Both the position numbers and the translations under genes were made by a program. Under the pieces are notes generated by a model. That model was given only the letters and a program-made list of their open reading frames with translations, was not told the origin of the DNA and did not search any database. Positions 14,001-58,229 of a stretch of 64,000 bases of DNA are shown piece by piece (positions within the stretch are counted from its first letter, which is position 1; each line of letters opens with the position of its first letter). Source of the DNA: Podarcis liolepis (lineage: Eukaryota); assembly GCA_965112155.1 (NCBI GenBank), contig OZ218103.1; one strand, given 5' to 3'.

Positions 14001-14771
14001 TCATAGGATGCAACCAGTGCAGCTCTTAATAGGAATGTTTCTAGCTGCCAAGCCCTTAGGACTTCTGCAGAGTGATATTTGAGCCGGGCAAGGAGTAAAG
14101 AGACAGAATGGCAGCCAAGTAATCTAGGATGACCTGTAAGGGTAGACATGCTGCAGAAACAAAAGCAGGATTAACCATTAATTGGGCAGAATATTCAACA
14201 GCTAGACCCAACAAGATAGGATTCCATGTTGACGTTAATCAGTGTGAAGAATGAATCTGTGTTGTTTCCTATTTAGGTTGCTTTTAGATCAGCTATGGGC
14301 AATATATGTGTTTTTCTTGGCTAGTGCTCAATTACAGGTTGGAGGAGGTCGCAGTCTCCCATTTTTACTGTCCAGGTATTTTGGGTGGCGAGGGTTTTGA
14401 GCAGAAACTCATTGGGGGCAGCTTGTCCCAAGAATCATTGATGGGGCAGGCTGCGCCACAGCCTCCAGGCTAAAACCAAAGAACAGAAAGGAGGGCCCCA
14501 AATGCTGGCTTTTGGAATTTAGACCTGTCTTGCTGAATGCATCCATGCCTTTACAGTACTGCCAATTTATCAAGAAATCTCCCATGTCCCCAACTGGGCT
14601 TGAAGAGGTCCTAGCTGCATAGAGTCCTTTGTGGCCCACCACCTAGTTTTAGCCTAGTCTTTACAACCTCTGACAAAGACAATATTGCGCGAGGATATCC
14701 AACACTTGTGACAAACAACTTGCAGCTTCTGCTCCTTTTAATCCTCCCCCTGGCTGTCTTTTGTCTTTTAG

Positions 14772-14973
14772 TCGATCCAGCCTAAATATGAAATCAGACG
14801 ATGGGCTGAGACCGAACTGCAAAGCCTCCCAAATAACCACAGCAATCATCAGCATTCCGACGCCTCCAGCACTGACCCCAGAAGGCGAAAGCAGGCCTGC
14901 CCCATCCAGCCCTGGCCACTCAACGAACATTACCGCTATGAGCAGCAACATTGTCAAGGTGTCGGCTTTGTAA
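14772..14973 (+). CDS. KCND3: Kv4.3 last coding exon ending ...[10 protein letters not shown]
   Basis: ttttag/T acceptor completes AG-T (Ser); RSSLN...IISIPTPP...VSAL (PDZ-binding end); TAA at 14971-14973. Confidence 0.98.
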
Positions 14974-17542
14974 GGCTGTGTCAGTCAAAGGAGGCTGATT
15001 GGAAGGCCGGCGTTTCTCTCCCTTTCCCCACCTCCATGTTCCTCCTTTGCTGCAAATTGTGCCTAGATGAGTGGCTGGGTGGACAGCTAGACCAACCTGA
15101 CCGGCATCTAAGAATTAACTGCGGGAGCCTCGCAAGGCAGCTTCCTTCAAACTCACATTCATGCTGCAGAGTGAGCTCAGAAGAACTGGGAAGCTAGAAG
15201 GGGCTGGTTGGAAGGAGCTCTCTTTTGTCTGTCAACAAGAAGAAATGTTCCCGGATGTGGGGCATAGAAGAGTTTCCAGAAAGTGGAAGAGACGTCCTGT
15301 CATAGCTACGAGAAAGTCAATAAAGAAGCAGAATTATAACACTGTGTATCTCAGCACCTTTTCAATGGTTTTTAATGGATAATATTTATTCATGAGGATA
15401 TGACTGAAAAAGGTGATTAGAAAAAAAAACGGATTTTGTGATTATTATTATTATTATTTCCTTCATGCAGCAGGATCTTTTAATCAACCAAAAGTACACA
15501 TTTGCTTTCTTTTATAGCTGAAGGTTTTAGGCAAAAAAAAAAGCCACCTTGTCACGAGAATTTGATTTTCATTCTTTTGTGAGTGTGTGTGTGGGTGAGA
15601 GCAAGCAAGAGGATTTGTGAAACTTGGCACACTCCGACTACAAAAGATCTGAGCACACTTTCCGGTTTCTGGGCTCAACCCTGCAAAGACGTACCATCTG
15701 CATGGTCCACGACAAGCTTTAAGTAGTGCCTGTAGAGCCAGGGGTTCTACTCACTGTGTACCCTTTTCTTGCATGAGTGTGTCTTTGCAGGCTTCAGCCT
15801 TTAGTGCGCAGTAGCAAAAATAGAGACCTGCATGCAGTCACACACACACAAGCACCAAGAAAACTCTCATTGTGGATGGCATTCTTTCTTAAGACAGGGT
15901 TTTGTTTTTTTCTGTAATTGCCTTTTAATTCAACACAAATTGCAGTTGCAAACAGTGTATTTGTCTGCTAATTATTGTATGTGCTGGGGGGGGATATTTG
16001 TTGGGGAGAAGACAGGCATTTGTAGTCCACCACAATTTTCTGCTTTTAAAAAAATTATTTTGTTATCACTGGCTTGTAAAGAGTGTGACTAGAATAACCA
16101 GTTCTGTATTTTTTAAAAAGTCTAAAGAAGTAAGCCTAGGGGGGATTTTATTTTTTAATCTTGTACACACGAGTTTCAAAGAGGGCAAAATCAGTCAAAG
16201 CAACTGCGCCAGATGTTCAGAAATACTCTGTAATCTATGCCCATGCTTTCTTTCTTTTTTCTGTTTTATATGTGTTTATTTAATAGTATTGGAAGTGTCT
16301 CCCATTGTATATAGTAGCCAGATAGTCAGTGGAAACTGTCCTTGGTAGGATTACTTCAGGAGCCAACTGTTTTGCATGGACTGATAGTGTGTTTCATTTT
16401 GTAATACAGTCCTGTGGCTCTTAGTGACAGTCTCTGGGTTGCATCAGTTTGATGGATAAAGCAATTTAACAATATTTGACTTTCCCTTGTTAAAGCATCA
16501 TTTCCTGCCAAAGAGGAGGATCGCTTCTAGATTGTTGGGATCTACTTTATATTAGAGTACCATTTCTAAGCAATTTATAAAACACTGTTAATAGATGGTT
16601 AAATATGTTTCAAAAATAGTTCACCAATTGTTAAAATATTGTTATACTGTTTAGAAAGCGTAGGACTGTGAGTCATAACCAGCTATAAGGTTTTATACCG
16701 ATGTTCTCATAATGTACCTCCCCTGGGTGCAAACCTGTGGGACTTCTATCCATGTCAACAAGGCTTACAATAATACAGAGCTCTGTGGATTGTGTTCTTT
16801 CGTCACAAATTTTACACGATTTATTAACCTTTTCGGACTCATTTAACCTTTCATTTTTTTCCAAATGTATTTTAGGTTGTGTATCCCATAATGTCTTTTG
16901 CAGCTTTGCAGCTTTCATTTTTGGCAAACCATCACAAAATGTGGCCCAGAATGTTTTTGATCCTGAAATTGTGTTGCTGTGAAAACATGGAGGTTTTGCA
17001 AACCCAACATCATGCTCAGAAAAAAATATAATAAGCAGCTCCAATGGGGGGGGGGAGGGAGGGAATCGTCTTTACTTTCAGACTTCTATTCTGATTTGCT
17101 TTTCGGCATCTAAATTAAAAGCATTGAGCAAATAGTGCTTGGAAGCCACAAAAAGGAATAAAAACAGCTAGTTCTAATGAAATGTACCTTTCAGCCAAAT
17201 AAAATTAAAACTTAATGTAACGTATGATCACCTACTAACAACAAACTTGTTTCTTAGTTTATTTCTTTTTTTCTCAGATACCTTATAGTGCTATGTTTTT
17301 GTTTATTCCAAAACCCCTTCCATCTTCAGATTTCAAACAAGGAATTTTGGTGCATTGGCCACAGAATCCCTTGCAAGCTGAATCCTAGAAGACAACAGGT
17401 GATGCTAGGTAACAACCAAGCCAGTTAGGTCTACATTGTCCTGCACATACTGAACGTCCACCTTAAAATATTCAACTGTGTCACTGTGTTGTAAGGAAAA
17501 AATGGCAATGGTGGACATGTGAACTTGTCCATCATGAAACAG

Positions 17543-17832
17543 ATTCAGGTGGATAGCCGTGTTGATCTGTCATAGTCATAATAAATAACAAGATGAAAGA
17601 TGAAAAAAATCTTTTTTTAATAATTCCAGTGGCACCTTAAAGATCAACTTCCCTGTGGGACCAACTATTATAACATTCATCAACAGTTATAAGGTTGAAG
17701 CAACCTCTGCTTCAGAGTATCTGACGAAGTGTGTATTACACACGAAAGCTCATACATTGAAAGCTTATATTTAGTTGATGTGCCACTGGAATTATTAAAA
17801 AATATATTTTCATCTTTCATCTTATTTATTAT
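17543..17832. mobile_element. Penelope-like element fragment with inverted arms
   Basis: Reptile Penelope end motifs (TAGCCGTGTTG...GTGGCACCTTAAAGA; CACACGAAAGCTCATAC); inverted arms 17578-17635/17780-17832; TSD CATCATGAAACAG (17530-17542)/CATCATAAAACAG (17833-17845). Confidence 0.85.
17715..17772 (+). ncRNA. Minimal type I hammerhead ribozyme motif (Penelope-associated)
   Basis: GUAU-CUGACGA-A-GUGUGU(AUU)ACACAC-GAAA-GC-UC/AUAC: core boxes, perfect 6-bp stem II, palindromic AGCU stem III, stem I GUAU:AUAC. Confidence 0.75.
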
Positions 17833-20800
17833 CATCATAAAACAGTCTTCTCATCAAGACATTCTCAATAAGCTTCTGAGGAACTGAAGGTTCCAAGGAC
17901 ACAGTTTTTAAAAGCCACTGTTCTAGTAATATGAGACAGGCCTTAATTTACCCCCTAATGTTTGTCCAAGAACCCTTTTTCAATACCACAGTTTAGCCTT
18001 GGAACAAGAAAAGGATGTGCCTTTTGAGTGTCTGCAGAGTAATATCTCTCCCCTATCCCCAGTCCCACACATCTAGGATTAGGGGAAAGGTTTGTGGGCC
18101 AGTGGCGAACAAATAAACTTCAGCTCTGGTACCTCTGATTTCAGAAATTAAGTACTACATTGTCCTCAAGTCCAATCATTCCATTATCTCATGGGTGATC
18201 CTGTTTAATTCACTCCAGTGAAAGCAAACTTTTGCCATTTCCCTTGTGAAACTGGTGCACAGTCTACGAGAACTGACCCATAAGAGTCTCTGTGATGCCC
18301 AATTTAAACTTTCCTTTGCTTCGTTTAACTTCATCACATCTCATTATACCTCTTGCCTAGTCAATTTGAAGCTTGATCCTTCACTACCCTCACCATATTG
18401 CATTGACTTTTTACATCTGTGCAAAGGGAGGCTAAAATGCAGGGTGTCCTTGCACATGCAGAATATGTCACAGCTCGAGCAGAAACAAACCCTTTTCGTC
18501 GCGAGATCACAGATTATGTAATTGGTATAAAATGAGAGTTTATATGGGGAGAAGAGCCTGGCTTCCTTAAGCCACAGTCCAATACTAACCAGTCCTTCTA
18601 TAAAAAACGTCTACTCCCATCTCCAATGCAGAGTTGTGGTTCTTATCATGCGTGGCCCACAGGATGATATAGAAAAGGACCGCCTCTGGCTCTTCTGCCT
18701 CCCTGCACCATGGCAAAAGTATCTTTGTTCAGCTGCATTGCAGGGAGGCAGTAGGCAAATGTGCGTCTGCAGTAAGGGTGCGAGGGCTGAGCAAAGCATA
18801 TAGGAACATAGCAACAGGCACTATGATGCCATTAACCATTGCAATCCATGACCAGTAGGAGAAATCACAGCAGGTAGCATTCCATGATACTGAATCATTA
18901 CTATTAGTCGCCAGATGAGATGGGGGCCCTGTACCTTTCCTATTCTGTAGGAGAAGGCATTTTGGCAAGTGGAGCTTTTCATGCAGTTCTTTATAACTGA
19001 CCATTCTAGAAGAGTGTGCCTTTACTTCAAGAATTCAATGTTTCTTGGTTTCGTTGTATGGCTCCAGCAAATCAGAACCCCAGAATATTCAAATTTGCAA
19101 ACTGGAAAATTGGTGTTTGGTGGATCAGGATCTTTATTTCAATATTCTGATGTTCTCATAATTTGGTTTTTCTTACAAGCCTCCAAAATGAATTTGTCTG
19201 CATCAAACCCACAAATGTAAATGTGGGTTCAATGGTCGCTTGGAAAATTGGTCTAGTCTCTTGGGATGATGGAATGTTACTTCTTTTTGCCCATCTATAG
19301 CATGACTTTGGCATGTGTGTGGTGCACTTGAGGGAGTACGGTACTTGAAAGTCCCAGGCAATATACCTCCTGCCAAAGACATACAGAAGTACTAACAGTC
19401 TGCATCATCAACCCCCCTCCATACCCGCATACCATTAGTCTGCTGAAATCACATTGACTTCTATTGGATTTTAGCAGTGTAGCTGTAGGATGTGCAGCCT
19501 GTTATTTTAATAATAGTGGGAGGTAAATAATGTCTTTGCTCTGTGAAGGGCACAGGAGAATTACTCCTATGGAAAGGTGCATGAGTGCAATGCCCCTTCC
19601 ATATATGCAAGGGAAGAATAGTGGATACTGTCTAATAACTCCAGCTCCTGGAGTCCCACAATTGGGTGAGAAAAAGCAGCAATAGTTCCAAACCTGTTGG
19701 TTGTGAAGTAAGATGTGGTTTCTGTGCTACCCACCATTTTGCCCCTACTAGACGTATCCAGCTATGTGTTTTCCCTCTCGTCTTAGAAAACCAGTGATCT
19801 AGTGCATTTTCCATCCCAAACTGACTCTGAAACATTCATTTATTCCCACCACTTGGCAGTTGGCATCACATTTCATATGACTATTACTTTTCATAAGCAG
19901 AATTGGACAAAAATATTTCCCTGCATATATGGCATCTTATCGTACCAGCATATCACAGCAAACTAAATGCTGACCATTCACTATTCCTGAAACACATAAT
20001 CTCACTGCTGTCAGTCAGTATGATCCACAACTTCTCATCACTTCAGCCAAGAGACCAGTGTGCATGAGAATTTTGAAAGTGTATGGCATTCCCCTGATTT
20101 TAGAAAAGGGATGTTCCTGAATATGCGGACATTAATGGGTATATTGGGGCTGATGGATCAGAAACAATGGGCACAATCCAAGTACTTTTAAGTCCCATTG
20201 ACTTCAATAGATAAATTTAAAAATGCAGTATGCTTACCATACCTATTGAAAGCAAAAGTACTTAACTTTGGATTTCAAATGTGACTACCTGAACACTCTC
20301 CCCCTGAAATATCATTGCCCTGCTTAGTATCTTAGAACCTAGGGAATGTGACTTTAGTCTTACATTTTCAAGTAGGGGATTATGGGTCTTTTTACAATAT
20401 TTGCAACTGTTTTGCTATGTATTGAGAAATAATTAAATAGACAAAATGTTAATCTGACTCAGGTCTCTGAGCCCCAAATCTGATAGTTTCTCTCGCTTTC
20501 TAAATTCTAACCAACTCTACAGCAGATCGAAAACAGTAGAGCAAATCCAACTGAACTCATCTTTTCCATCAACACAAAATAAAAATTCCGTCTTGTGTTT
20601 TAATATTTCCACTGAATTTTTCCATTTCTGAATTAAAAACCATTAAACAAAGAAGAGGGAGATGGAATCACCAAAAAGAGAAAAGCAATAAGAGGATTTT
20701 TTATTTTAATATTTTGAAGAGTGTTTCTTAGATGTACAAATTTTTTCTACAGAAAGGTGTCCTTTTTTTGCAATTGATGTAATTGTATACAGATCTTCGG

Positions 20801-22387
20801 TTGGTTTGTATTACCCAGGAAAATGAGTTCTTTTTAAATCAGTAGATAATCAACTTATTGTTCTCTTCCCTCTCAAAAACTAGTCAGTCATAGGAAAGTG
20901 AACTGTCTCCTTGTAACTCAGGTTTTCAATAGCAATGGCCATAGACAAATGTCACCTCCAGTGAGGTACTCCCTCTAGATTAGTTCAGTGATTAGGGCTA
21001 CTATCCTCTATACACTTTAGGTAGGAGTAAGTCCCACTGAACTGAGTAGGACTTCTGATTAAACATGCTTAGGATTGTGCCGTAAAACTGTTGATCAGAA
21101 CTTCTGTTCATGACTCACTGTGTCTCCTGGAACAAGCCACTCTGACTTTTTAACGTCTCAGTATATCTACCAATAAGATTCAGGTAGTTTTAAAAATAAC
21201 TTCCTCTCTAGTTCAGTGCTAAATTTATGATCATTTGCTTAACTCAATTAAAACTCTTTAATATTAAAGTATACAAAATGTTTTCTGGAGGGGGGATGCC
21301 AAATAAGATGTCTCATTATTTAGAGCAATTACTGATTGGAGAAGTTAGTTTTTAAGGGAGACAAATTGTTGGAAATATACCAATGGCCGTTAATCAAGAT
21401 GATCAGCATTTTTTTAACTCTTAAGGTGGGCACGCTGTTTAAATCAAACAATGAGGAACAGAGGGACTGTCATTACTCTGTGATGTTACACTCTGAAGCC
21501 TTCAGCTACGACAAATATCAAATAACCAGAGTAAGATCTGCACTTCCTTTAGGCTATAAGGGGAATCATCAAAAGAAGAAAGATATCTTTTGTGGATGGT
21601 TCCTCATGTCAGAGATGCTATGAGAAAAAAGGGGACATGCAGGTCAAGGTGTCTTCATCTCCAAGTCCAGATTGAGTGAATTGGACGCAAAGATGGAGAA
21701 GTCCATTGTCGATTGGAATTTCAGGAACCACGGGGCTAGATTTACTGTTGACCTAACACAGCACGACAGTTCTTTTGTTTTTCTTGTCTAATTATTGTAG
21801 TCATCAGTCATGGGACCAAATGACAAATAATCCTCTAGTCTTGCTTTCAGTCAAAGGTTTCATAATTTTGTGCGTATGTGCGCATATGTGTGTATTGCTT
21901 TCTTTTCCTTTGCAGACTAATGCTTGCCACGGCAGGTCAAACAGCCATGCAGCTGAGAGATTAAGATCCGTAGTATATCCTTTTCTCAGTTCTCTGTTGT
22001 TACCATGACTGGAGTTGCAGCTGGCTCCATGGACCAATGAAATATATTACAGAACATGTGTGATGGTATATTTTTGATAAATCAGTGAGACATTCCAATG
22101 CAATGGTGTTTGCGCTAGAGGTTTTATGTTGTTACCAGAATTCTCTCTCAATTGCATTATTTTCTATTTTCATACTCTAAATGGGCTTTGCTTACAAATC
22201 ATCACGACCAACTGAGACAAAATTGTACTGTACAAAACTGCAGGTAGATTCGTTTCAGAAAAACTTTCTAAAGAATCCTAAGTTTCCTGTTGTCTTCTTT
22301 TGAAACTGTAGTGCATATGTTGAAACTTGTATATCATTTACAGTACTGCGTCTTGTGCCACTGCTGTACCTGATGTATCCAATCTGG

Positions 22388-31957: not shown

Positions 31958-32193
31958 CTGAAAAAAAGGTCAAGCTGTGAATAGACTAGAAGAACAAACA
32001 AAAAATGAATACATCATATTTCCTAGATTATTAACCCCTCTGCTCCCGTAACAGCTGAGGGACCAATAAGTGACACTTCTTTGATGGCATTTTTAGTCAG
32101 CTAGAAGCCAGATATCCCCTCAATAAGTGCCAATCACACTTACAAAGCATCCTTAAATATCAGCATAAATCCATATGTAACAGTTATAATAAA

Positions 32194-32326
32194 CTGAGCT
32201 TTTGTGTGCATGCACACGAAAGCTCATACCAATAACAAACTTAGTTGGTCTCTAAGGTGCTAGTGGAAGGAATGTTTTTATTTTGTTTCGACTACGGCAG
32301 ACCAACACGGCTACCTACCTATATCT
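32194..32326 (+). mobile_element. Short Penelope-like fragment in DDX20 intron 2
   Basis: GCACACGAAAGCTCATACC...CTAAGGTGC...AACACGGCTACC; 12-bp TSD AGTTATAATAAA at 32182-32193 and 32327-32338. Confidence 0.85.
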
Positions 32327-56179: not shown

Positions 56180-57145
56180 TGAGCTAACTCCCATAGCAGT
56201 GCCTATTAGCTTGCCTACTAGTACTGAGCTTTTCCTTTTGTACGTTAATCATCACTGGGTTTCTTCCCATCAAAAGGAACACTGGAGAGATTTATGGGCA
56301 AAGTTAAATATTAGATTAAGGCTGCAATGATTCATTTGTGTTAATTTTCACATATGGAATCTTGCATCTGGCTTGTGATGTTTTAAAACTATTTCAACAA
56401 AAAATGAAAAAAGGTTGTTTTCCACTGGATCACACGCCTTGCGATTTATGAAATTGCAACTGTACTCTTGTTCTGCCCTATCCATCTTGCAATGAACTCC
56501 ATATATCAGGGGGAGGGAAAGCTTTACAGAGTACCCGAAAACAAATATTACCTTCCACTGAAGCACCAATTGAATATTGTTCAACTGTGGCAACAGTCTC
56601 TGCAGAGTATATCATGCTGTAAATCAATGAGTTATCGTTGCTGTTAAGATTTAAGAGGAAAGGGCCAAAGAGACAGCTTGGATATCAAAATCTATTTTTC
56701 CATGACCCAGGGAGAGAAGGCTTTCACTCAGCATGCTCCTGTTTGGAAGCAGCTGGAAAAGAAGACACTTGCTGGAAGGGTGGTTGGGCGGGCGGGCGGG
56801 TGTGGGGTGTGTGTGTGTGTTTCTCTCCCTCCCTTTACAGATCATAAAAAGGCAGGCTTCTCAAAAAATGTCTCCAGCCCTTGGGGTATGTAGAGTGCAA
56901 ACTTGGATAAGAGTTGCAGTGAGGGGAATGGGAAATTCCCAGAGAAAATTCTATGTTTTTAAGTAAAAATGTCTTGGTAAAATAGTATTCTGGACTGCTG
57001 TGTGATCAGCTACTGTAGATTACACAGACCTTGCACCTAATCACTTCACATTGCCTCAAACAGTGGCCTGTTTTCCTTCCTTCTGCCAAATCAACAGTGG
57101 CCTGCTCATGCATTAAGCTACAGGTGAACAAGGGTCAAGCAATTT

Positions 57146-57265
57146 CCAGAAGAGTAGCCTTGTTTGTCCTTTGCAGCTTAAAAAACAAAAATATTGTGGC
57201 ACCTTAAAGACTGATAAATTTATTATGACGTAAGCTTTGATGGGCTCAACTGCACTTCATCAGAG
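57146..57265 (-). mobile_element. Degenerate Penelope-like fragment
   Basis: GTAGCC...TGTGGCACCTTAAAGACT...TAAGCTTT...CACTTCATCAG (CTGATGAAGTG on the - strand). Confidence 0.7.
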
Positions 57266-58229
57266 CCATGAAAGGCTGATCAGCTGAGTGATGAGGAATT
57301 AAATGGTGTCCGTGCATGTCCAAACCTATTTAAATATTTTTTTAAATCAATTCTTCTAACAGGAAAAACAAAGCTTGAGAACACAAGGATGATATGTGTT
57401 GAGAGATCTCAGGTACCTAAGCAGGGCTCCCACAGCCACAGGGCTGGCATTTGCCTGTCTCCCACTGCTGTTTTACCAAGACCCGTGCTCCTATTGCCCT
57501 TTGCTCTCCCAGTCCCACGATCAAAGTGTTTGAAAACCACTTGGAAGCAGAAGGGAGGAATTTTTTATTGTTTGGCTCAAAGTTTGGAGTGCGTGTGTGT
57601 TTGTGTGCAAAGTGCATACAGCCCTGCTAATAACAAATGGAAGATAGCCACTAATTAACTCAGTCTCCCAAACAAAACCAAAATATGTTCTATCCCCTTG
57701 GTTCTGCCCTCTGATACTTTTTTATTTTTTCCACCAATGAAGGAACACAAACACTCAAGAGTGCTCCTATTTTCAGTTCAGCTTTAAGGTGCTAGAGATT
57801 CCCTAACATGGGTAGGCCTGTCCTGAAACCTGCTTCTCCTAACACGTGCACAAGTCGTCACTTGAAGCTGCAGTGCACACCAAGTGTTGGCCCTGCCTGT
57901 GTAAGGCACCCAACCTTGTTCCATGTGGTGGACTCTCATTCTGTGGTGGCTGGTGGAATAGAGAAGCAAGTGGGCTAATAACAAAATACTGGAAGGATGA
58001 ATTCATGATGCAATAATGGTGCAACTATGCTTGGAATTATGCACTAGCCGAGAAGCCCACCAAGCAAGTTCGAGCACTAAGATGGCCAGACTATGGGGGT
58101 GATTTTGTGGGCCAATGGTGTGGATTTAGTTAATGGGTGAATAGATATATGAGGCTGCGATAGCTCCCTCCATACATATGTCTCACTGTGGCAATGACCT
58201 GTTGGGATGAAGAAGAAAAAAGCTTTAAA

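What the first reader, a model, noticed from the sequence alone, without database searches (positions are those of the whole stretch)
17715..17772. Sense hammerhead ribozyme in the putative KCND3 3' UTR, possibly made cis-active by a local duplication
Seen: CUGACGA (17721-17727), an extra A, perfect stem II GUGUGU/ACACAC, GAAA (17744-17747), then GC-UC and AUAC pairing with upstream GUAU. Known: Penelope-like elements carry minimal type I hammerheads whose short palindromic stem III is thought to need dimerisation. Unusual here: a second GAAAGCUUAUAU (17759-17770) replaces the CAATAACAAAC found at this position in the 32.2-kb copy. This allows an intramolecular stem III (AGCU 17747-17750 with AGCU 17762-17765, 11-nt loop), a CUU triplet (cut after 17766) and a 6-bp stem I (GAGUAU:AUAUUU, two G-U pairs). 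Inference: a transposon-derived self-cleaving element that could remove the distal UTR and poly(A) tail from long Kv4.3 mRNAs. Activity may be low (CUU triplet, weak stem I), and inclusion in the mRNA is unproven.
Basis: partly seen in the sequence, partly recalled or inferred. Interest (0 to 1): 0.82.

Follow-up and report, generated by a model that had tools for sequence, protein, structure and literature searches.

The report
Ordinary Penelope-element hammerhead relic near KCND3
The hammerhead-ribozyme motif is really there, but it is one routine copy of a very abundant lizard jumping gene (a Penelope-like element); the "local duplication" said to activate it is found throughout that repeat family, and nothing shows that it is part of, or cuts, the KCND3 messenger RNA.

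Summary
The motif is a textbook minimal ("min") hammerhead of Penelope-like elements (PLEs). It has CUGACGA, the family-typical unpaired A, a 6-bp helix II closed by G10.1-C11.1, GAAA, the palindrome AGCU, and a 4-bp helix I (GUAU:AUAC).

It lies inside a 294-bp fold-back PLE mini-insertion at 17540-17833, flanked by a 10-bp target-site duplication. This is 2.75 kb downstream of the Kv4.3 stop codon, on the sense strand.

The second GAAAGCUUAUA box is not a local event. Contigs laid at 80% likeness show a high-copy family (summed depth 2849 against 37), and its other copies carry both boxes without a gap.

In thermodynamic models the second box instead pairs with the upstream GCUUC to close helix I of the ordinary hammerhead, which would cut after 17751.

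Published work shows that such ribozymes are inactive as monomers, and that the Anolis one needs the PLE protein.

The sparse RNA reads stop before about 17.2 kb, where poly(A) signals cluster. Inclusion in the mRNA is therefore unsupported.

The same scan noted 110 findings mentioning hammerhead and Penelope elsewhere in this genome. Verdict: ordinary, low interest.

The parts
14761..14973 (+). End of the last KCND3 (Kv4.3) coding exon, ...NIVKVSAL, with the stop codon at 14971-14973
   Evidence: ORF. It matches residues 568-636, the C-terminus, of human Kv4.3 isoform 2 at E 5.9e-30.
17114..17209 (+). Cluster of four poly(A) signals (ATTAAA 17114, AATAAA 17157, AATAAA 17198, ATTAAA 17204), about 500 nt upstream of the hammerhead
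   Evidence: The sparse single-cell reads of a related species end before this point.
17530..17539 (.). Left target-site duplication, CATCATGAAA
   Evidence: It matches 17834-17843 at 9/10. Similarity of other family copies ends at 17539-17546 (loose ends).
17540..17649 (-). Inverted, 5'-truncated PLE 3' arm, including the terminal AC-rich tail (...CAACACGGCTATCCACCTGAATCTG on the minus strand). It has no hammerhead.
   Evidence: Inverted repeat 17578-17640 / 17775-17835. In other family copies the minus arm runs on into a hammerhead region behind 17649 (table 7).
17650..17833 (+). Plus-strand PLE copy carrying the hammerhead. It lacks the last ~40 nt of tail that the minus arm has, and has a 7-nt deletion after 17779 relative to about a third of the other copies.
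   Evidence: Contigs from other family copies span 17670-17823 (table 8). CTTAAAG is put in behind 17779 in 476/1528 of depth (table 4).
17709..17720 (+). 5' strand of helix I: closing stem GCUUCAG, an unpaired A, then GUAU
   Evidence: MFE fold. Pairing probabilities are 0.6-0.77 for GUAU:AUAC and mostly 0.45-0.76 for the closing stem (one pair 0.23).
17721..17728 (+). Catalytic box C3-A9 (CUGACGA) plus the unpaired A between positions 9 and 10.1
   Evidence: The extra nucleotide is a conserved trait of PLE min-hammerheads (PMC4209133).
17729..17743 (+). Helix II: 6 bp, GUGUGU/ACACAC, loop AUU, closed by G10.1-C11.1
17744..17751 (+). G12-A13-A14, the palindrome A15.1-G-C-U16.1 (AGCU 17747-17750) and C17. 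The ordinary cut site is after 17751.
   Evidence: The architecture is as published for PLE min-hammerheads. The position of the cut relative to helix II agrees with the mapped site of the Anolis PAc hammerhead.
17752..17764 (+). 3' strand of helix I: AUAC, an unpaired A, then UUG-A-AAGC. It overlaps the start of the 'second box'.
   Evidence: Duplex energy is -8.3 kcal/mol against -3.4 +/- 1.8 for shuffles (1.75% as good).
17759..17769 (+). Second GAAAGCUUAUA box, a 10/11 repeat of 17744-17754 and a family-wide feature
   Evidence: D3. Contigs from other family copies span it with 0-1 gaps. The loose-end consensus of other copies reads ...AAAAGCTCATTCCTAGAAAGCTTA.
17834..17843 (.). Right target-site duplication, CATCATAAAA

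Best explanation
The stretch is the hammerhead motif of one dead copy of a high-copy Penelope-like retroelement family of a lizard genome. A single insertion produced a 294-bp fold-back mini-element (17540-17833). It has an inverted, 5'-truncated 3' arm on the minus strand (17540-17649) and a plus-strand copy (17650-17833) that carries the hammerhead. A 10-bp target-site duplication flanks the pair. The motif is the ordinary PLE min-hammerhead. Helix I is GUAU:AUAC extended by a closing stem. It also has CUGACGA, an unpaired A, a 6-bp helix II, GAAA, the palindrome AGCU in place of a helix III, and a cut site after C17751. The second GAAAGCUUAUA box belongs to the family sequence. In this RNA its first letters are predicted to close helix I by pairing with the upstream GCUUC. 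By inference from published members of the kind, such a motif cannot cleave as a lone monomer: it needs a second copy, and in the Anolis element it needs the PLE protein. Here it most likely does nothing for KCND3. It lies about 500 nt beyond the poly(A) signal cluster at 17114-17209, upstream of which the few RNA reads seen here stop. Shown: the anatomy, the family-wide nature of the repeat, and the predicted folds. Inferred: catalytic inactivity and absence from the main mRNA.
For: Family membership: at 80% likeness the summed contig depth over 17554-17751 is 2849 against about 37 in flanking bins. At least six contigs that differ from the window by 6-11 letters (five of run X1, one of X20) span about 17670-17823. 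Four of them cover both boxes with 0-1 gaps. No deletion is listed between 17750 and 17778. The only majority difference is A>C at 17756. A loose-end consensus from other copies also shows both boxes. G>A at 17726 (20% of depth) and at 17744 (16%) shows CpG decay of the catalytic G8 and G12 in the family, meaning the copies are under no selection. 'Opposite strands' joints in other copies (table 5) show that the inverted arrangement recurs. Folding: the MFE uses 17709-17720 with 17752-17764. Literature: the min-hammerhead traits (nucleotide between 9 and 10.1, G10.1-C11.1, palindromic 15.2-16.2, long helix II, short helix I with a closing stem, opposite-strand pairs 100-700 bp apart, presence in reptiles, inactive monomers) are in PMC4209133. 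The Anolis Poseidon hammerhead shows no cleavage without PLE protein, no RNA-seq read ends were found at its cut site, both DNA strands are cut and extended, and the 30-40 bp tail is optional (PMC11167929). RNA: about 10 single-cell reads fall in 15.2-17.16 kb and none in 17158-17355 or 17950-20127. A bulk run gives nothing on unique sequence. Poly(A) signals are listed.
Against: No cleavage assay exists for this sequence. The catalytic core of this particular copy is intact, with G8 and G12 retained. A version of it appears in the MFE of the whole fold-back transcript, so an intramolecular helix III is not excluded. Nearest-neighbour energies ignore hammerhead tertiary contacts. RNA evidence is thin: it comes from a related species, from unknown tissues, and from 6-12% of each run. 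Run X20, if it is RNA, has a contig over 17317-17649, and AATAAA at 18112 could serve a longer isoform. The family evidence comes from collapsed contigs at 80% likeness or more, not from a full census of copies.
Confidence: 0.85

Rival explanations
1. The second AGCU (17762-17765) pairs in cis with the first (17747-17750) to give a 4-bp helix III. GAGUAU:AUAUUU forms helix I. The RNA then cleaves itself as a monomer after U17766 and trims long KCND3 3' UTR isoforms.
For: The geometry is a valid hammerhead topology. The helix III pairs have probability 0.19 in the short context, and three of the four appear in the MFE of the whole element. A helix III mimic added to a PLE min-hammerhead gave detectable cleavage in vitro (PMC4209133). 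The core of this copy is intact.
Against: The repeat is not specific to this locus. The fold is about 10 kcal/mol above the MFE with P about 2e-4, and its helix I has probability below 0.001 and -0.6 kcal/mol as a duplex. The published helix III mimic worked mostly at non-physiological Mg2+. The Anolis PLE hammerhead is inactive without its protein. No RNA reads fall in the unique flanks. A CUU triplet is a poor cleavage site (established hammerhead biochemistry, from my own knowledge).
Confidence: 0.04
2. Family-level adaptation. The 15-nt-spaced repeat arose once in the master copy of this lizard PLE subfamily and is kept because it helps the element's own hammerhead, either as the closing stem of helix I or as a switchable cis helix III. 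It is irrelevant to KCND3.
For: A 10/11 repeat right next to the core is unlikely by chance. It is shared by other family copies. Its first six letters are complementary to the upstream GCUUC, and the helix I duplex is better than 98% of shuffles. Two other PLE subfamilies in the window lack it.
Against: No covariation could be tested, because only one copy of the subfamily is readable here. The z-score of the local fold is only -1.03. The segment aligns with an AT-rich stretch of near-equal length in other subfamilies, so a few substitutions could have produced it neutrally.
Confidence: 0.2
3. The fold-back acts through its long hairpin rather than the ribozyme. The arms, about 55-70 bp, would form double-stranded RNA in any read-through transcript, which could be a substrate for editing or small-RNA processing.
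For: The inverted arms are 79-93% complementary. The whole element folds at -103 kcal/mol with the arms paired.
Against: No transcript through the element is shown. The A>G differences seen there also occur in the DNA contigs, so they come from other family copies. Such fold-back PLE inserts are common in this genome.
Confidence: 0.04

Closest known systems
Minimal hammerhead ribozymes (min-HHRs) of Penelope-like elements (Cervera & De la Pena 2014, PMC4209133; Lunse, Weinberg & Breaker 2017 as cited in PMC6765202)
   Same: [quoted passage not shown]
   Different: This subfamily carries a second GAAAGCUUAUA box 15 nt after the first, which the two other PLE subfamilies in the window lack. The inverted partner arm here is truncated before its own hammerhead, so there is no second ribozyme nearby to dimerise with.
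Hammerhead of the Anolis carolinensis Poseidon PLE, PAc (Mob DNA 2024, PMC11167929)
   Same: A lizard PLE hammerhead with helices I and II and loop II but no helix III. The cut site lies just 3' of GAAA-GCU-H. The element's 3' end lies about 100-140 nt downstream, in an AC-rich tail that is optional. This fits the minus arm having the tail and the plus copy lacking it.
   Different: PAc is an autonomous, coding element whose ORF starts at helix II. Here there is no ORF, since the frame from helix II runs into a stop at 17772-17774. PAc cleavage was measured and needs the PLE protein; nothing was measured here.
Discontinuous hammerhead in the 3' UTR of rodent Clec2 genes (Martick et al. 2008, as summarised in PMC6765202)
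   Different: The Clec2 ribozyme is a full three-helix hammerhead with demonstrated cleavage, and it is conserved at orthologous positions. The present motif lacks a stable helix III, belongs to a dispersed repeat, and is not shown to lie within the mRNA.

Membership tests
PLE minimal hammerhead (min-HHR) | Catalytic boxes C3-U-G-A-N-G-A9 and G12-A-A14, followed by A15.1 ... U16.1-H17 | tested here: met
   CUGACGA at 17721-17727; GAAA at 17744-17747; AGCU at 17747-17750; C at 17751.
PLE minimal hammerhead (min-HHR) | [quoted passage not shown] | tested here: met
   A17728 is unpaired; G17729 pairs with C17743; helix II has 6 bp. The criteria are from PMC4209133.
PLE minimal hammerhead (min-HHR) | No helix III; positions 15.2-16.2 palindromic | tested here: met
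   AGCU is followed directly by C17 and the 3' strand of helix I.
PLE minimal hammerhead (min-HHR) | Short helix I (4-5 bp), optionally with loop 1 and a closing stem | tested here: met
   GUAU:AUAC plus the closing stem 17709-17715 / 17757-17764 in the MFE. The duplex is better than 98% of shuffles.
PLE minimal hammerhead (min-HHR) | Lies in the terminal repeat or 3' region of a Penelope-like element | tested here: inconclusive
   It lies in a high-copy dispersed repeat with the PLE-type architecture: hammerhead about 100-140 nt from an AC-rich 3' end, an optional tail, an inverted partner and a target-site duplication. No reverse-transcriptase ORF of the family could be read in this window, so the link to PLEs rests on architecture and on the published descriptions.
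PLE minimal hammerhead (min-HHR) | Self-cleavage (as dimer or protein-assisted) | not testable with these tools
   This needs an in vitro transcription and cleavage assay.
Rfam hammerhead families (type I RF00163, type III RF00008, type II, HH9, HH10) | Score at or above the family's gathering threshold with a covariance model of the three-helix ribozyme | tested here: not met
   There is no hammerhead hit at gathering score in the whole window, and none at E<=10 in 17500-17950.
Cis-acting 3' UTR hammerhead (Clec2-like) | Lies between the stop codon and the used poly(A) site of the mRNA | tested here: inconclusive
   It is 2.75 kb downstream of the stop codon on the sense strand. RNA reads stop before about 17.2 kb and poly(A) signals lie at 17114-17209. 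Depth is too low to exclude long isoforms.
Cis-acting 3' UTR hammerhead (Clec2-like) | Stable three-helix fold within a single RNA | tested here: not met
   The proposed fold is -7.3 against an MFE of -17.2 kcal/mol, with ensemble probability about 2e-4.

The most novel reading that the evidence does not exclude
The 15-nt-spaced repeat of the GAAA-AGCU-H-helix I strand arose in the master copy of this lizard PLE subfamily and turns a dimer-dependent min-hammerhead into one that can supply its own helix III in cis. Every intact copy, including this one downstream of KCND3, would then be a weak monomeric self-cleaver that could truncate read-through or long-UTR transcripts.
Probability: 0.05. 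Interest if true: 0.55.

Novelty: new member of a known kind. Interest (0 to 1): 0.13.

Why it matters
As it stands this matters little. It is one more dead copy of a known kind of ribozyme-bearing retroelement, in a genome that holds very many of them. The useful result is negative. The feature that made this copy look special is a family trait, so the locus gives no case for ribozyme control of Kv4.3 mRNA. The only thread worth keeping is at family level: whether the internal repeat of this lizard subfamily changes how its hammerhead folds, as a helix I clamp or as a cis helix III. That question bears on why PLE hammerheads are built to be inactive alone.

Tried and rejected
- **Rfam covariance models.** No hammerhead was reported at gathering score or at E<=10. 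This is expected for a motif without helix III and is not evidence against the motif.
- **My first motif script.** It missed the true helix II because it extended the stem greedily into the loop. The hit it printed, ending at the second GAAA, is an artefact of that script.
- **Scan of metagenome contigs for other family copies.** It found nothing.
- **Earlier-findings search by sequence.** It found nothing.
- **Supplements of PMC11167929.** A search for tail motifs, to compare with the Anolis element, found nothing. The Lunse et al. 2017 paper is not held, so I used the summary of it in PMC6765202.
- **Pfam on the last exon.** It gave no family. The PDB sequence search settled the gene identity instead.
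- **Run X20, labelled 'RNA?'.** It covers the stretch patchily at a uniform depth of 4-7.5 out to 20.9 kb, with no fall-off. I read this as genomic DNA or an unresolved source, and did not count it as evidence of transcription.
- **Bulk RNA run X23.** It gave nothing on unique sequence.
- **Trans dimer (double hammerhead) of two copies of this RNA.** It comes out at -29.3 kcal/mol against -31.8 for two separate monomers. It is therefore not favoured, and there is no second same-strand hammerhead nearby.
- **CTGATGA...GAAA match at 21780-21807, minus strand.** It has no helix II and is at the chance level.

Full report
**1. The observation**

The letters are as described.
- CTGACGA lies at 17721-17727, followed by one extra A at 17728.
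- The hairpin is GTGTGT (17729-17734), ATT, ACACAC (17738-17743).
- GAAA lies at 17744-17747, followed by GCTC.
- ATAC (17752-17755) lies opposite GTAT (17717-17720).
- A second GAAAGCTTATA lies at 17759-17769. The repeat finder lists it as a 10/11 direct repeat of 17744-17754 at a spacing of 15.

The core pattern CTGANGA-N12-24-GAAAGCTH occurs once in the window against 0.08 expected. No Rfam hammerhead model reports it, at gathering score or at E<=10. That is expected for a hammerhead without helix III.

**2. Where it lies**

The ORF ending ...NIVKVSAL, with its stop at 14971-14973 on the plus strand, matches the last 69 residues of human Kv4.3 at E 5.9e-30. The motif is therefore 2.75 kb downstream of the KCND3 stop codon, on the sense strand.

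**3. What it sits in**

The motif is part of a 294-bp fold-back insertion.
- **Minus-strand arm, 17540-17649.** This is a 3' arm of a repeat ending in an AC-rich tail (...CAACACGGCTATCCACCTGAATCTG), truncated at its 5' side before any hammerhead.
- **Plus-strand copy, 17650-17833.** This carries the hammerhead.
- **Arm complementarity.** The arms are 79-93% complementary.
- **Target-site duplication.** The pair is flanked by CATCATGAAA (17530-17539) and CATCATAAAA (17834-17843).

Two further, more decayed copies of related subfamilies lie at about 32190-32320 (+) and about 57135-57285 (-).

This architecture matches what is published for Penelope-like elements.
[quoted passage not shown] They report these often as pairs on opposite strands 100-700 bp apart, and in reptiles (PMC4209133).
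- For the Anolis Poseidon element, both DNA strands are cut and extended. Reverse transcription starts in an AC-rich stem-loop about 111-118 bp into the ORF, which itself begins at the start of helix II. A 30-40 bp tail is optional (PMC11167929). This fits one arm here having the tail and the other lacking it.

The ordinary cut site is after C17751.

**4. The 'local duplication'**

I laid the contigs of a DNA run of the source species on 14980-20900 at 80% likeness.
- **Copy number.** Summed depth rises from about 37 in unique bins to 2849 over 17554-17751 and 971 over 17752-17949. This is a high-copy family.
- **Both boxes present in other copies.** Contigs that differ from the window by 6-11 letters, and so come from other copies, span 17677-17769, 17678-17777 and 17670-17774 with 0-1 gaps. 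Others span 17671-17775, 17678-17809 and 17736-17823.
- **No deletion.** No deletion is listed between 17750 and 17778. By contrast, a 7-nt insertion behind 17779 is reported at 31% of depth, and skips of 96-120 nt are also listed, so a 12-15 nt gap would probably have been listed.
- **Only one majority difference.** In the hammerhead region this is A>C at 17756.
- **Independent confirmation.** A loose-end consensus from two other contigs reads through ...AAAAGCTCATTCCTAGAAAGCTTA, so it has both boxes.
- **Decay in the family.** G>A at 17726 (20%) and at 17744 (16%) shows CpG decay of G8 and G12 among copies.

The second box therefore belongs to the family.

Aligned with the two other subfamilies in the window, the box occupies the place of an AT-rich segment of nearly the same length (difference of 4 nt or less). 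Nothing of 12-15 nt was added at this locus. Whether the master copy acquired the box by an old duplication-replacement or by a few substitutions cannot be told here.

**5. How the RNA is predicted to fold**

- **Local MFE (17700-17790).** It pairs 17709-17720 with 17752-17764. That is GUAU:AUAC plus a closing stem in which the GAAAGC of the second box pairs with the upstream GCUUC. This duplex is -8.3 kcal/mol against -3.4 +/- 1.8 for shuffles, and 1.75% of shuffles are as good.
It scores -7.3 kcal/mol against -17.2 for the MFE. Forcing it gives an ensemble probability of about 2e-4. Its helix I has pairing probability below 0.001 and -0.6 kcal/mol as a duplex.
It is less unlikely: probability 0.19 locally, and three of its four pairs appear in the MFE of the whole fold-back transcript (-103 kcal/mol). 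In that fold the long arms pair and neither version of helix I forms.
- **A trans double hammerhead of two such RNAs.** It scores -29.3 kcal/mol against -31.8 for two separate monomers. No second same-strand hammerhead lies nearby.
- **Overall local fold.** Its z-score is only -1.03.

**6. What is known about activity**

- Single PLE min-hammerheads showed no detectable self-cleavage. Dimers, trimers and a construct with an added helix III cleaved weakly, mostly at non-physiological Mg2+ (PMC4209133).
- The Anolis Poseidon hammerhead shows no cleavage without the PLE protein, and no RNA-seq reads were found to begin or end at its cut site (PMC11167929).
- A review summarises that PLE hammerheads act as dimers and are slow even then (PMC6765202).

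**7. Is it in the mRNA?**

- **Single-cell RNA run of a related species (about 6% read).** About 10 reads fall between 15178 and 17157. None fall in the unique bins next to the element (17158-17355, 17950-18147) or on to 20127.
- **Bulk RNA run.** It gave nothing on unique sequence. Reads over the element itself come from other family copies.
- **Poly(A) signals.** They lie at 15319, in a cluster at 17114-17209, and next at 18112 outside the element.
- **Run X20, guessed to be RNA.** It covers the stretch patchily at an even depth of 4-7.5 out to 20.9 kb. I read this as DNA or as unresolved.

There is therefore no support for inclusion, and weak evidence that the main 3' ends lie upstream. Long isoforms are not excluded.

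**8. Verdict**

It is wrong on the point that made the finding interesting. The motif is an ordinary member of a known kind. The same scan holds 110 notes mentioning hammerhead and Penelope in this genome, several on fold-back mini-elements, and another on a min-hammerhead in a KCND3 intron.

The most novel reading left open is that the subfamily's internal repeat gives its hammerheads a cis helix III. I put that at about 5%.

Noticed in passing
window 32186-32325 (+): A 5'-truncated PLE 3' region of another subfamily. The CUGANGA box is broken (CTGAGCT...). Helix II, GAAAGCTC and the AC-rich tail (...CAACACGGCTACC) are kept. It has no second GAAAGCT box.
   Followed up: partly
window 57135-57285 (-): A third PLE copy, with an intact CTGATGA but G12 changed (CAAAGCTTA) and a degraded helix II. 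It is a dead hammerhead of yet another subfamily.
   Followed up: partly
window 17530-17539 and 17834-17843: A 10-bp target-site duplication (9/10 match; 12/13 if the next CAG is counted) brackets the fold-back pair. Both arms therefore came in with one insertion event. One arm has the optional ~40-nt tail and the other does not.
   Followed up: yes
window 20179-20221: Four bulk RNA-seq reads of a related species match only these 42 nt, with unrelated sequence on both sides (table 7). This is probably a short shared repeat or a fragment of a transcript from elsewhere.
   Followed up: no
window 17726 and 17744: In the repeat family the two catalytic guanines G8 and G12 both sit in CpG dinucleotides. 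They read A in 16-20% of contig depth from the other copies. This is a built-in route by which genomic copies of these hammerheads die.
   Followed up: partly
window 15319 and 17114-17209: Candidate KCND3 poly(A) signals. The proximal one coincides with a small pile of single-cell reads at 15178-15375.
   Followed up: partly
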